DNA from: Diadema antillarum
Taxonomy: Eukaryota
Assembly: GCF_040938485.1 (NCBI RefSeq)
Contig: NW_027271391.1
Span: 248,001 to 312,000 of the forward strand
DNA length: 64,000 nucleotides
Direction: 5' to 3'
Shown here: piece after piece, positions 28,376-57,198 of the stretch
Numbering within the stretch: the first letter of the stretch is position 1
How the letters are laid out: every line of letters starts with the position of its first letter
Position numbers and translations under genes: made by a program
Notes under the pieces: model-generated
Told to the model about the DNA's origin: nothing
Database searches by the model: none
The model's input: the letters and a program-made list of their open reading frames with translations, nothing else

Positions 28376-28703
28376 GATTGTACTACATGTACTTAAAAGT
28401 CGTATATATCCATATCCCTGTTAGTGCATAATTACAATTTGTTTTGTCTTTTGCAAAATAAACATTTTTTCAATTTTGTTCATAGCCTGCTAGTCCTGAC
28501 CCTCATCGAGTATATGGTCATTTGCTTAATCAAACATTTCAACCAAAATGTTTATAGCATCAAACAGAGTAATCTGCAATCATCAAAAACATACGGTACT
28601 CAGACATTTAATATCACAACCAGTCGAACTCTGCAAATGCTTTGTCAGTATAGTATCGGATGCGCTTATACCTCTATTTTCCCTGTTTGCTTCCGGGAAA
28701 TAG

Positions 28704-30613
28704 CTACATCTCTGTTCCTTCCTTTGATGCAGATGCCAATTCAGCTTCAATGTCATTGCACTCTGTTTGTAGTCCCGTCTTTTCACGAACAGCCGATCGT
28801 TGGTGACCTTCCGAGAAAGCTCTCACATAATCTATCAGTGAGAGAATCCAGTCCTTAATAGAGATGAAGTAATCTAAGCACCTTTGGGCAAGAGATGGAG
28901 ACTGATCCAGGGCTGGCTGAGTGTGTACGAATCTGATGGCATCAAGAAAAGCCTGGGCATCGTCCACCGACATCTCAATCGAGTCGTCCAGTTTGCCGCA
29001 AACGTAGACCCATTTGGCATTCTCAAATGTGGCGGGCTGTGCCTTTTTGAAAGTATCGTAAAATGCTTCTTGGTTACTCACTGGCCAGTGAAAGTCGTGA
29101 ACTATTACAAACACCTTTAGTGGACCTGCAAGGCAATGAGACAACAATAAAGACAAAAAGGCACAATATTTCAATCTGCATTTCTTATTCACCCGAGGTC
29201 CAACAACAAAGGCACAATCAATCAAAATTCCCCTCAAATCCCATCCCAGCACAACAAGAATAAAACATACAGGCATGATATTCTGTACATTTAAATCTGA
29301 ATTCAGATTTTTTTAATCATGTTTATACACAATTTTGCTTTTTTTATGTTATAAAAATCACCTGAAAATTTTGATTTTTGATTTGTTCAACAAACCTCAA
29401 TATCATCCCTGAAACATACTAAATCAATGTAATGGACACAATTTGTTATAAAGCAGAGAGTATATATTCCATAAATCAACCTCTTGCTATCACTGAACAG
29501 ATTGTTCACAAGTTAAAATCAGCAATCTCTGCTTCTGAACAGAATCCTAAACAATGCAAGAGCCAAGGATCCTGCAAGTTATGTTAAAGAAGAGCATCAG
29601 AATTATTTTTATAGTTACAGCATAACTTGCATGTTCCCTCGCCATGTCTTTTGTTAGTCACATTAATATTACAGAAATATGCAAGTTATGCTGAGTCGAA
29701 GGGAAGGTGCATTCCAATGTCTTTTGTTAAACATATGAGTACTTCAGCAATGATTGACAGATTAGGTCACAACAGGAATATTGGTTTGGAAGGATTTTTT
29801 GTGGGTGTATCCAAGCAATCTGAAGAAAAATTACTTAAAAATATATGGAATGTTTCTAGATATTCATTTCACTGCAAAAGTGATGTTGAGGGTATCATCC
29901 CTGACATAAACCAACACAAAAATCAACATGCATCGATTTGTATTTCAGAGAACCTTTAAGTCTGATTTTAGTCTTTTTATCTACTAGGTTGATCAAAAAC
30001 TAACGTACAGTAAACTGCACTTTAAGTATGGATTCAGACATGATTCTGGGGTTGGGTTTGGCGAGTGTGTGCGTGTGAGTGCGGGTGTGCATGTGTATAA
30101 TAAAAAAAAATTGTCAAATTTCTATTCAGGAATTATATGTAGAGTTTGTTGCTCTGGAAAAATCTCACTGGATATCTACTCACCAAAGTGATTTCTGGCC
30201 TTTGGTAGGAACTTGTCATAGAGAGCATCCACAACATTCGTAATAGCAAAACGTCTGTTGTGGATGGAGTGGCAGAGAATGACAGCATTGTAGTCTTTCC
30301 AGTCTGGGCGGAACGAGTCAAGGTCGTTGTACGGCAGACGCACGAACTCTACCCTCCCCACGTAGGGCTTCATCTTCCCGTCAGTCTGGAGGTACGTCAA
30401 GAGTGCTTGAACTGAGTTCTGACCGGATCCGCTGCAGACACACAGAGAGATGCGCTCCGCCACCACCTCCTCTGGTTCCTGCACCTCCCCCTTCTCTAGA
30501 TCTTCCTCCTCCTCCTTCTTTGGTCTGTTGTTCTCCTCTGGTGGTAATGATGCATTTTCATCCCCAGAGAAAGTGGTATTGGTCTCCATGGCAGCCCTTG
30601 TCCCTGTGTTCAT
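28704..30613 (-). CDS. Uncharacterised ~283-aa protein with an acidic N-terminus and a predicted flavodoxin/TIR-like alpha/beta domain
   Basis: Exon 30613-30184 (ATG to CAC TTT G|GTGAGT) splices in phase to exon 29125-28704 (TTGCAG|GT CCA...TAG). An acceptor (TTTTTCTCTCCATAAAAACAG, exon start 30621) lies just before the ATG, and a possible upstream UTR exon donor is at 31750. Alternating strand/helix pattern: ISLCVCS-helix-VEFVRL-AVILCHS-helix-KVFVIVHD-helix-WVYVCG-helix. Confidence 0.8.
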
Positions 30614-32297
30614 GTAGCAGTCTGTTTTTATGGAGAGAAAAAAAATCATCAGAGCATGATGCTAAAGATTACAGTATTTTGATTACCATGCTTAGTAATG
30701 AGTACACCTATGGGTGTATCATTAACATTCAATTGTTACGACTACTACCACCCCTGTAATTATCTTCTTTCTTTTTTTAGTAAGTGTTATTTTGGCTGTG
30801 AAGATTACATATCTTTATTACTATTACTCAGTAGGTCTACAGGTCAGCAATTTACAACGATCTTTGAAATCACAACCTGTAATGAAGAGGAAAAATAATG
30901 TGTACATGTAAGTAGACATGTTGATAGAAATATCCGTCTACTCCAGACAAGTTTTTTAAAACAATGTTTTAACGTTTACTTTTACAGCTCTACTCTGTAG
31001 ACATAGGAGGGAAATCCGTGAAGCCAGACGTCTACGCAGAACATATCCCTGAATTTAAGATACACATCGATCATTCGGTCAAGCAAGCATGGTATCTTGC
31101 ACAAAGCAAAGGCACATTTAACAAACAATGCGCCGCATTTATCATCAGAACAAGAGGGTGAGATGAGACCTCCTTGCTCATGTCATATGAATCAATGGTC
31201 CCGTCAGCTCAGCTGGTCGCAGTTCACTTAGGGTCACCGTCAGGGTACGTATCATCTCTCATGGCCATGCCAGTTGGTGCAAAATGCACCATGCAATATC
31301 TGATATTTCAAAGTAACAACTAAACTTTTACCTTTCTTTCATTCAGACTGCATTAGCGAATCTTCAAAGACTGTTTTTTTCTTTAACCACTTTTAATTAT
31401 TGAAGATGAATTGGGTAATTTGCTTCTATTGGTGAACACAAACTTCACAAAGACACGAAAAGGATAGCGATAGATCTAGTGATTCTGCTCACGCCCCAGC
31501 ATGCAGCAGCGCGTTTCTTATTAAAATCCTCTGGGCTCTTGCTACTGGTCACTAAATCACTGCCGAAACGGCAATATTTTCCAGTCATTGTCAGATTGAC
31601 GGAAGAGATTTGACCTTCACGGTCTTGCTTCCTAACTCAGTAAAATTTAACTACGTATTTAGCTACAAACCTAGTCTATTAATCGTACAAAGAAAGATCA
31701 AAAGGCCAGGTCAGGATGAGGTTAAACATTAGTAATTATACCTACTTACCATTAAGATTAATATCATAGCAGGAGTACGGTAGATTAGCAGTCGAAGTCC
31801 AAGTCAAACTGGTAAATCATCTCATTCGGAGTCATACGCTCACTTGCTGTGCCCACTGCACTGCACTGGCGATGTTTTGGCTGTGGCGTAGGTGTGAGTG
31901 GTGTATGGTACGACGTAGAGGGGGCAGCAGACACCCGGGGAATCCCCACAGAATCTATGGGAATCCCCACTAATCTCCAACTACCGTAGTTAAATAGAGA
32001 TCATGAGAGGCCGGGAATAAAGCAATATCCCTGACAAACACTGAACTCTTTGTAAAAAAAAAAAAAAAATGACCTTCCATTATGATCATCGAAGTCTATA
32101 GAAGCAAGCGACTTAAATAGCGCCGCCATGCATCACCTGTTTGAAGATCACGTCTTTTATCGGTGAAACTCACTGATCTGTACCTAACTATCGATACAGA
32201 TACGAGCAATGATTTATCTTTAAAGGTGATTTCTTCTTCTTCCTGTTATTCTCTTCCTCGTTCTCCTTTGTGTTACATTCAAAAGTCACACGTTACA

Positions 32298-56986: not shown

Positions 56987-57198
56987 NNNNNNNNNNNNNN
57001 NNNNNNNNNNNNNNNNNNNNNNNNNNNNNNNNNNNNNNNNNNNNNNNNNNNNNNNNNNNNNNNNNNNNNNNNNNNNNNNNNNNNNNNNNNNNNNNNNNNN
57101 NNNNNNNNNNNNNNNNNNNNNNNNNNNNNNNNNNNNNNNNNNNNNNNNNNNNNNNNNNNNNNNNNNNNNNNNNNNNNNNNNNNNNNNNNNNNNNNNNN
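56987..57198. other. Assembly gap (212 N)
   Basis: Run of N. Confidence 1.

What the first reader, a model, noticed from the sequence alone, without database searches (positions are those of the whole stretch)
28704..30613. Unnamed gene encoding a candidate divergent TIR-like domain
Seen: a well-spliced 283-aa protein. An acidic, disordered leader is followed by five beta/alpha units (ISLCVCS / VEFVRL / AVILCHSIHNRRFAITNVVDALYDKFL / KVFVIVHD / WVYVCG) and an amphipathic C-terminal helix (LAQRCLDYFISIKDWILSLIDYVRAF). Known: TIR and SEFIR domains are five-stranded flavodoxin-like folds, and TIR NADases use a Glu in the helix after strand C. From memory, not a search: the motif xLxHSxxNRRxxITxVxDALYD resembles uncharacterised, lineage-expanded fish and amphibian proteins with SLYDEEL at this position. 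Inference: this may be a member of an unnamed animal TIR-like immune or signalling family that has lost the putative catalytic Glu (YDKFL), acting as an adaptor or decoy.
Basis: partly seen in the sequence, partly recalled or inferred. Interest (0 to 1): 0.7.

Follow-up and report, generated by a model that had tools for sequence, protein, structure and literature searches.

The report
Unnamed sea-urchin and frog alpha/beta domain
This is a real two-exon sea-urchin gene whose protein carries a five-stranded alpha/beta domain of a family found so far only in sea urchins and frogs, absent from Pfam and from the searched papers; a kinship with TIR immune domains is possible but not shown.

Summary
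The 283-aa two-exon model (minus strand, 30613-30184 and 29125-28704) is letter for letter the RefSeq protein XP_071499108.1 of Diadema antillarum. Diadema setosum has an ortholog with the same junction (exon-2 dN/dS about 0.47).

The domain belongs to an unnamed family:
- No Pfam, NCBIfam, PADLOC or PDB sequence match.
- At least 106 exon-1 matches in this genome, 93 of them in arrays on seven contigs.
- Most members are an N-terminal domain plus a membrane helix. This gene is a long-branch singleton with an acidic leader and an amphipathic helix instead.

The TIR reading is not established:
- TIR profiles find nothing (hhalign probability 0.1-0.2%).
- The frog Glu (89%) aligns with echinoid Phe135, not Lys134. 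If a Glu was lost at all, that is a trait of the whole echinoid clade.

No RNA data could be reached. Function remains inferred.

The parts
30184..30613 (-). Coding exon 1 (codons 1-143 plus the first base of Gly144); ATG at 30613, GT donor follows at 30183-30182
   Evidence: It is identical to the N-terminal 143 residues of RefSeq protein P0192.
30455..30613 (-). Acidic, probably disordered leader (residues 1-53; 16 acidic and 5 basic residues)
   Evidence: Translation. pLDDT is 54-69 in the ortholog model. Most family members lack it.
30185..30454 (-). First half of the conserved domain (residues 54-143): strand 1, helix 1, strand 2, LPYND loop, strand 3, helix 3
   Evidence: AF2 model. It has 106 six-frame matches in the own genome. 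The family HMM scores P0192 at E 1.4e-73.
30206..30280 (-). Family signature, residues 112-136 (ILCHSIHNRRFAITNVVDALYDKFL): His115, Ser116, Arg121, Thr125, Val127, Asp129, Tyr132, Asp133 and Leu136 are kept in both sea urchins and frogs
   Evidence: Motif scan. Column statistics of 85 echinoid and 95 anuran domains.
29126..30183 (-). Intron (GT..AG, 1058 bp), at the exon end shared by the paralogs in the arrays
   Evidence: Paralog matches end at query residues 137-143. The junction is the same in P0192 and P0043.
28704..29125 (-). Coding exon 2 (last two bases of Gly144, codons 145-283, stop TAG at 28706-28704)
   Evidence: It is identical to the C-terminal 139 residues of P0192. dN/dS is about 0.47 against the D. 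setosum-like contigs.
28917..29123 (-). Second half of the domain (residues 145-213): strand 4 with HDF, helices with the Gln173-Pro174 kink, strand 5, helix 5
   Evidence: AF2 model. Asp154 and Gln173 are kept in both clades.
28803..28892 (-). C-terminal amphipathic helix (residues 222-251), in the place where most relatives have a transmembrane helix
   Evidence: Helix 222-251 in the model. The best 19-residue Kyte-Doolittle mean is 1.02 and the hydrophobic moment 0.4-0.5, whereas 30 of 42 named echinoid relatives reach 1.6 or more. It is unchanged between the two Diadema species.
29618..29962 (.). Interspersed repeat of about 340 bp inside the intron; not part of the gene's function
   Evidence: Very high depth and strand-switch joints in the DNA contigs. 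The own genome gave 2095 first-look candidates; 40 were scored and gave 70 matches, the full-length ones 83-87% identical, often as inverted pairs.

Best explanation
The stretch is an intact, conserved, two-exon protein-coding gene of the sea urchin Diadema antillarum.

What it encodes: a divergent member of an unnamed protein family built around a domain of about 160 residues with a five-stranded parallel (beta-alpha)5 fold of the flavodoxin-like class. The family is found so far in echinoids, where it sits mostly in large tandem arrays, and in anuran amphibians, where it occurs as single-domain membrane proteins or as 2-6 tandem domains followed by coiled coil.

Usual architecture: an N-terminal domain without signal peptide, then one membrane helix, then often a short Ser/Thr/Pro-rich or NxT-rich tail. 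This puts the domain on the cytosolic face of a membrane.

Where the conservation lies: the residues kept across both phyla are Ser/Thr61, His115, Ser/Thr116, Arg121, Thr125, Asp/Asn126, Asp129, Tyr132, Asp133, Asp154 and Gln173. In the model's secondary structure, Ser/Thr61, His115-Ser/Thr116 and Asp154 sit at the C-terminal ends of strands 1, 3 and 4, the next six lie in the loop and helix after strand 3, and Gln173 in the helical stretch after strand 4. This edge of the sheet is where folds of this class bind ligands.

Inferred mechanism: the domain binds, or acts on, a small and probably phosphate-bearing ligand or a partner protein at a membrane.

This gene's variant: an early-branching singleton outside the arrays. 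It gained an acidic disordered leader and has an amphipathic helix in place of the membrane anchor, so it is more likely soluble or peripherally attached.

Shown: the gene model, conservation, family membership, fold class, the architecture of relatives and the lack of any TIR sequence signal. Inferred: cytosolic orientation, a ligand pocket, and any biochemical activity.
For: Gene model and conservation:
- Exon translations equal RefSeq P0192.
- D. setosum ortholog P0043 has the same junction.
- Exon-2 dN/dS is about 0.47, with a 53-residue stretch that includes the C-terminal helix unchanged.

Family:
- 106 own-genome matches to exon 1, 93 of them on seven contigs.
- 40 echinoid proteins in the word search.
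- 393 proteins at E<=1e-3 in the exhaustive profile search.
- Every hit that carries a species name is an echinoid or an anuran.
- Anuran and echinoid sub-profiles align at hhalign probability 99.3%, E 2e-20, over 157 columns.
- No Pfam, NCBIfam, PADLOC or PDB sequence family matches.

Fold:
- AF2 models with pLDDT above 90 over most of the domain for both clades; the frog model is a clean (beta-alpha)5.
- The ESM Atlas structure search gives flavodoxin-like neighbours.

Conserved residues.

Architecture:
- Hydrophobic segment after the domain in 30 of 42 named echinoid members.
- Membrane helix plus NxT/STP-rich tail in single-domain frog members (model).

Position of this gene: a long basal branch, at most 45% identical to any relative. 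There is no paralog in the window.
Against: - No expression data: no RNA run holds the stretch, and the junction rests on annotation and conservation only.
- No residue-level view of the model was available, so the 'pocket' is read from secondary-structure positions, not from coordinates.
- Several residues invariant in echinoids (Cys60, Cys114, His153) are not kept in frogs, so the two clades may do different things.
- The fold class is so common that it says little about function.
- Only the best 150 of 393 profile hits were visible, so the taxon range may be wider than echinoids and anurans.
Confidence: 0.6

Rival explanations
1. The domain is a very divergent branch of the TIR/STIR superfamily. 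Frog members keep a Glu on the helix after strand C and could cleave NAD+. Echinoid members, this gene included, carry Phe there and would act as scaffolds or adaptors that signal by oligomerising.
For: - The (beta-alpha)5 topology is the TIR topology.
- The frog Glu sits about 76 residues after the start of strand 1, on the helix after strand 3. The catalytic Glu of TIR NADases lies on helix C (SfSTING E84, PMC9402430).
- Strand 1 ends in a hydrophobic-Phe-Ser-Arg motif in frogs, reminiscent of the TIR strand-A motif (from my own knowledge).
- Membrane-anchored, array-expanded cytosolic domains in animals are typical of immune receptors (general knowledge).
Against: - No TIR sequence signal at all in Pfam scans of 50 family proteins or exon translations.
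- The TIR HMM over the whole genome finds 37 TLR-type loci and none of the family's arrays.
- hhalign against a 17-sequence TIR alignment gives probability 0.1-0.2%.
- No TIR model in PADLOC or NCBIfam is hit.
- The structural lead of TIR is under 1 Z unit over translation GTPases, IRGQ and CheY-like domains. It is reversed for the window's ortholog, where Gtr2 scores 11.1, the KdpE receiver 10.8 and TIR 9.1.
- The loop between strand 3 and the Glu-bearing helix appears about 7 residues longer than in a TIR motif I recalled from memory (not tested with a tool).
- Whether the Glu superposes on the TIR Glu could not be checked.
Confidence: 0.25
2. The domain is a degenerate P-loop NTPase, a pseudo-GTPase in the manner of IRGQ. 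It has lost the Walker A motif and serves only as a protein-binding scaffold on membranes.
For: - Foldseek's best matches for the echinoid model are Rho/Rac/Ras, IRGQ and GIMAP2 (E 1e-4 to 1e-3).
- There are weak sub-threshold matches of the frog 'VVVLDDL' strand to the Walker-B part of AAA_16 and KAP_NTPase, and to ObgE in two members.
- Membrane-anchored immune GTPases such as GIMAPs have a similar layout (general knowledge).
Against: - There is no GxxxxGK[ST] or any conserved Lys after strand 1.
- Both models have five strands. The frog model has a helix between strands 2 and 3 where Ras-like GTPases have a beta hairpin and six strands.
- Foldseek rmsd is 6-8 A.
- The AIG1 HMM finds nothing in this genome.
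- All sequence matches are below the curated cut-offs.
Confidence: 0.1
3. The gene is not functional: an annotation artefact or a decaying copy of an array gene.
For: No RNA evidence could be obtained. The branch is long. dN/dS of 0.47 in exon 2 is not strongly constrained.
Against: - The frame is open in two species and in both haplotype copies, with canonical splice sites.
- All residues invariant in the alignment of 26 echinoid proteins are kept.
- The 53 residues around the C-terminal helix are unchanged at dS of about 0.12.
- dN/dS is well below 1.
Confidence: 0.04

Closest known systems
TIR domains (Pfam PF01582/PF13676; e.g. bacterial TIR-STING 9lmq/7un8, plant RPS4/RRS1 TIR 4c6t)
   Different: - There is no sequence or profile similarity (hhalign probability 0.1-0.2%).
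- The structural lead is within the tie zone and is absent for the window's ortholog.
- The domain is N-terminal to the membrane helix, the reverse of TLR/IL-1R.
- Echinoid members have Phe at the Glu site.
- The family's own signature, H-[ST]-x4-[RG]-R-x2-[IV]-T-[DN]-V-x2-[AS]-L-Y-D, is not a TIR motif that I know of.
CheY-like receiver domains (e.g. KdpE 4l85/4kfc, CpaE/TadZ N-domains 4dn6/4lda)
   Different: Strand 3 ends in His-Ser/Thr, not the phospho-acceptor Asp. There is no acidic pair after strand 1 and no conserved Lys after strand 5. Receivers are not known as membrane-anchored expanded families in animals.
IRGQ and other Ras-like or TRAFAC GTPases (8q6q, Gtr2 4arz, GIMAP2 2xtm)
   Different: There is no Walker A, G3 or G4 motif. 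The sheet has five strands, not six. The frog model has a helix between strands 2 and 3.
RefSeq 'uncharacterized protein' models of echinoids and anurans (e.g. XP_071499108.1 D. antillarum, XP_072177831.1 D. setosum, LOC100891260 S. purpuratus, LOC100498591 X. tropicalis)
   Same: These are true relatives. XP_071499108.1 is this very protein. They share the signature motif and the fold, and the own-genome paralogs share the exon boundary.
   Different: None has a name, a Pfam family or a paper in the searched library. Most have a membrane helix and no acidic leader, and frog members carry Tyr, Gly and Glu where echinoids carry Cys114, Arg120 and Phe135.

Membership tests
TIR (Pfam PF01582 / TIR superfamily) | Significant match to TIR sequence profiles | tested here: not met
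   - No TIR family at E<=10 for the two exon translations or the 26 echinoid members of A1, and none at E<=1 for 10 further members.
- PF01582 over the own genome gives 37 loci at E<=1e-4, none in the family's arrays or at this locus.
- hhalign of the family, anuran and echinoid profiles against a 17-sequence TIR alignment gives probability 0.1-0.2%.
- No TIR model in PADLOC or NCBIfam is hit.
TIR (Pfam PF01582 / TIR superfamily) | Five-stranded parallel (beta-alpha)5 flavodoxin-like fold | tested here: met
   AF2 models. The frog model has all five helices. The echinoid model has a loop in place of helix B. The feature is shared with CheY-like, flavodoxin and other superfamilies, so it does not define membership by itself.
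TIR (Pfam PF01582 / TIR superfamily) | TIR structures stand out as the best structural neighbours | tested here: inconclusive
TIR (Pfam PF01582 / TIR superfamily) | Catalytic Glu on helix C (NADase TIRs; SfSTING E84, PMC9402430) | tested here: not met
   The window protein has Phe135 at the column where 89% of frog domains have Glu. Echinoid domains there are 81% Phe and 12% Tyr. Whether the frog Glu is spatially equivalent to the TIR Glu could not be tested, because no residue-level superposition was available.
Unnamed echinoid-anuran (beta-alpha)5 family (this report) | Match to the family profile and signature H-[ST]-x4-[RG]-R-x2-[IV]-T-[DN]-V-x2-[AS]-L-Y-D | tested here: met
   P0192 scores E 1.4e-73 against the family HMM. 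The signature is at residues 112-132. All 22 invariant columns of A1 are kept.
Unnamed echinoid-anuran (beta-alpha)5 family (this report) | Exon boundary after helix 3 (phase 1, Gly144) | tested here: met
   Own-genome paralog matches end at query residues 137-143. Gly144 is nearly invariant.
Unnamed echinoid-anuran (beta-alpha)5 family (this report) | Membrane helix after the domain (usual architecture, not strictly defining) | tested here: not met
   The best hydrophobic window after the domain is 1.02, against 1.6 or more in 30 of 42 named echinoid relatives. The helix is amphipathic.
Ras-like / TRAFAC GTPases | Walker A GxxxxGK[ST] after strand 1, and a six-stranded sheet with a beta2-beta3 hairpin | tested here: not met
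   No conserved Gly/Lys motif follows strand 1. Both models have five strands, and the frog model has a helix between strands 2 and 3.
CheY-like receiver | Phospho-acceptor Asp at the end of strand 3, acidic pair after strand 1, Lys after strand 5 | tested here: not met
   Strand 3 ends in [CY]-H-[ST] and strand 1 in [CF]-[ST]-[SR]. There is no conserved Lys after strand 5.

The most novel reading that the evidence does not exclude
The family is a previously unrecognised branch of the TIR/STIR superfamily that builds receptors of reversed topology: a cytosolic N-terminal domain, one membrane helix and a short glycosylated outer tail. It expanded independently in sea urchins and in frogs. Frog members would keep an NAD+-cleaving Glu. 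The whole echinoid clade, including this soluble, acidic-leader variant, would have replaced it with Phe and would act as non-catalytic adaptors or regulators.
Probability: 0.2. Interest if true: 0.75.

Novelty: new variant of a known kind. Interest (0 to 1): 0.5.

Why it matters
Sea urchins are a reference point for innate-immune gene expansions such as TLR, NLR, SRCR and 185/333. Here is a further family with about fifty copies per haploid genome (an estimate, assuming the paired contigs are haplotigs). It shares a receptor-like membrane layout with a large frog family. It has no name, no Pfam model and no paper in the searched library.

If the conserved pocket binds a nucleotide or NAD+-type ligand, the family would add a signalling module to deuterostome biology. 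It would also pose a question of distribution: it has been seen only in echinoids and anurans so far.

For this gene alone the gain is modest. It is the odd, soluble, single-copy member, and it could serve as a tractable entry point for expression and binding assays.

Tried and rejected
- Pfam on both exons, on four long-leader paralog ORFs, and on 26 + 10 + 7 + 5 family proteins: no family. There were only sub-threshold coiled-coil or Walker-B-like noise, plus real kinesin, P2RX7_C, GNAT and kinase domains fused in a few frog models.
- PDB sequence searches with each exon and with two family profiles: nothing.
- PADLOC and NCBIfam: nothing relevant.
- DUF4630 (PF15443), suggested by the ESM Atlas at scores of 0.81-0.85: no member matches it in Pfam scans, so I dropped it as a lead.
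- PF27559.1, precomputed on one frog protein: it is absent from the local Pfam copy and carried by only 1 of 120 listed hits, so it is not the shared domain.
- Long open frames (538-622 aa) at some paralogs are disordered charged leaders or intron read-through, not extra domains.
- AIG1/GIMAP HMM on the own genome: no hit.
- Cys-x5-Arg (Cys114..Arg120) as a phosphatase or arsenate-reductase P-loop: it is invariant in echinoids but Tyr..Gly in frogs. The loop has no Gly, and no PTP, rhodanese or ArsC structure is among the top matches. Rejected as unsupported.
- A Cys60/Cys114/His115/His153 metal site, specific to echinoids: could not be tested without coordinates.
- Paper searches by twelve LOC identifiers and by keywords: nothing.
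- Reads: only DNA contigs of a D. setosum-like genome, so neither the junction nor expression could be tested.
The whole protein was used only through P0192 and P0043, which tools returned.
Full report
**1. The observation**

On the minus strand an ATG at 30613 opens a 430-base exon that ends at 30184 before a GT. A polypyrimidine tract and an AG precede 29125, and the frame runs on to a TAG at 28706-28704. The junction is phase 1 and the product has 283 residues.

I searched the two exons separately by reference and did not join them. The joined protein entered the work only as P0192, a database protein returned by a cluster look-up. P0192 is XP_071499108.1, an 'uncharacterized protein' of Diadema antillarum. 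It begins with the exon-1 translation, has Gly at the junction and ends with the exon-2 translation.

- A second copy on contig C1652 is identical in exon 1 and differs at two residues in exon 2. It shares the intron repeat at 99% identity and is most simply a haplotig.
- Diadema setosum has a 283-residue ortholog, P0043, that is 93% and 88% identical over the two exons and has the same junction.

**2. Constraint**

No RNA run holds the stretch. The three runs that do hold it are genomic DNA. Applying their listed substitutions to exon 2 reproduces the D. setosum protein but for one residue. From these, exon 2 has dS of about 0.12, dN of about 0.057 and dN/dS of about 0.47. Fifty-three consecutive residues around the C-terminal helix are unchanged.

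**3. Structure**

AF2 on the D. setosum ortholog, with 26 echinoid sequences, gives pLDDT above 90 over about residues 51-210:

| Element | Residues |
|---|---|
| Strands | 55-61, 85-92, 110-116, 148-153, 182-185 |
| Helices | 65-77, 125-143, 162-179, 197-212 |
| Final long helix | 222-251 |

The one difference is that residues 93-109, the invariant LPYND-LDSF stretch, form a loop and not a helix. The first 53 residues hold 16 acidic and 5 basic residues and are modelled with low confidence.

A second model, of a single-domain Xenopus tropicalis relative (P0272), is a clean (beta-alpha)5 domain followed by a membrane helix.

**4. The family**

No Pfam, NCBIfam or PADLOC family matches either exon or any family domain tested, and neither exon nor two family profiles match any PDB sequence.

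In this genome:
- A six-frame search with exon 1 finds 106 matches. Ninety-three lie in dense arrays on seven contigs: C117 20, C1204 16, C1365 16, C838 13, C736 12, C357 11, C206 5. These contigs pair up as probable haplotigs, so I estimate about fifty copies per haploid genome.
- Exon 2 is much less conserved, with 16 weak matches.
- The window holds no paralog. The gene sits alone between unrelated genes.

Elsewhere:
- Word searches and one exhaustive profile search find relatives in Strongylocentrotus, Lytechinus and Diadema.
- Every named chordate hit is an anuran, from Ascaphus to neobatrachians. No fish, salamander or caecilian appeared among about 150 named hits. Only the best 150 of 393 profile hits were visible.
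- The anuran and echinoid sub-profiles align at hhalign probability 99.3%, E 2e-20, over 157 columns, so the cross-phylum homology is firm.
- On a tree of 126 domains the two clades are reciprocally monophyletic. The window protein is a long basal branch of the echinoid clade, at most 45% identical to any relative.

**5. Architecture**

Thirty of 42 named echinoid members have a hydrophobic segment after the domain, in some followed by a Thr/Pro-rich tail. Single-domain frog members have the same layout, with NxT-rich repeats after the membrane helix in Ascaphus.

There is no signal peptide, and in the echinoid member I examined (P0034) basic residues precede the membrane helix. The domain is therefore most likely cytosolic (inference).

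Other frog members string 2-6 domains before a coiled coil. A few predicted proteins add a kinesin motor, a P2RX7 C-terminal domain, a GNAT or a kinase. Some of these may be merged gene models.

The window protein differs. It has the acidic leader, and its C-terminal helix is amphipathic (best hydrophobic window 1.02, moment 0.4-0.5) and not membrane-spanning.

**6. Conserved residues**

In 85 echinoid and 95 anuran domains the shared near-invariant positions are, in window-protein numbering:
- Ser/Thr61
- His115 and Tyr132 (100% in both clades), Ser/Thr116, Arg121
- Thr125, Asp/Asn126, Val127, Asp129, Asp133, Leu136
- Gly144, Asp154, Gln173, Pro174

Read against the model's secondary structure, Ser/Thr61, His115-Ser/Thr116 and Asp154 sit at the C-terminal ends of strands 1, 3 and 4. 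Arg121 to Leu136 lie in the loop and helix after strand 3. This edge of the sheet is the usual ligand site of such folds. This is the basis for proposing a ligand-binding or catalytic pocket, and it is an inference.

Cys60, Cys114, Arg120 and His153 are invariant only in echinoids; frogs have Phe, Tyr, Gly and Asp there. The echinoid Cys-x5-Arg and a possible Cys/His metal site are therefore clade-specific. I could not test them.

**7. The TIR question**

Sequence gives nothing:
- No TIR profile hit in any library.
- The Pfam TIR model over the whole genome finds 37 TLR-type loci and none of the family's loci.
- hhalign against an alignment of 17 own-genome TIR domains gives probability 0.1-0.2%. 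That TIR alignment is narrow, which limits sensitivity.

Structure gives a tie.

| Model | Search | Matches |
|---|---|---|
| Window ortholog | Foldseek | Prefers small GTPases, IRGQ, GIMAP2 and flavodoxins (E 1e-4 to 2e-3) |
| Frog member | Foldseek | TIR-STING first, E 1.6e-5 |

The five-strand (beta-alpha)5 count argues against a Ras-like origin. It leaves TIR, CheY-like and flavodoxin-like superfamilies open. Receiver-domain residues are absent. On priors, a membrane-anchored expanded cytosolic domain in animals suggests TIR-like, so I give that reading about 0.25.

**8. The 'lost Glu'**

TIR NADases carry their catalytic Glu on helix C; it is E84 in SfSTING (PMC9402430). In the family alignment the frog motif L-Y-D-x-E-L has Glu in 89% of domains. 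That column is Phe135 in the window protein, and 81% Phe and 12% Tyr across echinoids. Lys134 is a variable column in both clades and is Glu in the D. setosum ortholog.

So the Glu is missing, but it is missing from the whole echinoid clade and is not a loss in this gene. Its equivalence to the TIR Glu is unproven.

**9. Verdict**

This is a real, conserved gene. It is already annotated as an uncharacterised protein, and it encodes an atypical soluble member of an unnamed (beta-alpha)5 domain family of echinoids and anurans. The family is worth describing. Its biochemical role is open, and TIR kinship is a live but unproven hypothesis.

No paper in the searched library mentions any of twelve locus names.

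Noticed in passing
window 29618-29962 (inside the gene's intron): An interspersed repeat of about 340 bp. The own genome gave 2095 first-look candidates; 40 were scored and gave 70 matches, the full-length ones 83-87% identical. Elsewhere it often occurs as head-to-head inverted pairs. In the D. setosum-like DNA runs its depth is thousands of times that of the flanks, with strand-switch joints.
   Followed up: partly
window 30621-30650: A T-rich tract followed by CAG ends at 30622, just upstream of the ATG at 30613. It looks like a splice acceptor, so the gene may have a further, non-coding 5' exon upstream. An in-frame ATG at 30649 lies before it.
   Followed up: no
G000 contigs C117/C1204, C838/C357/C206, C736/C1365: Dense tandem arrays of family paralogs spaced about 10-25 kb apart. 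Pairs of contigs give identical E-values, which suggests uncollapsed haplotigs. Some paralogs carry charged, disordered leaders of 400-500 residues in the same exon as the domain (L038, L039, L040).
   Followed up: partly
Frog relatives P0093, P0158, P0147 (kinesin motor), P0084 (P2RX7_C), P0068 (GNAT), P0286 (protein kinase): A few anuran gene models fuse the domain repeats to a kinesin motor, a P2X7 C-terminal domain, an acetyltransferase or a kinase. These could be real fusions or merged neighbouring genes.
   Followed up: no
window 56987-57198: A run of 212 N (assembly gap or masked stretch). I left it untouched.
   Followed up: no
window 28500-29296 against the DNA contigs of runs X1-X3: Substitutions against the D. 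setosum-like contigs are denser in coding exon 2 (28 in 422 bases). The 3' flank has 3 in 204 bases and the adjoining intron part 4 in 171 bases. Other intron pieces are 5-8% different, so the pattern is uneven and I did not interpret it.
   Followed up: partly
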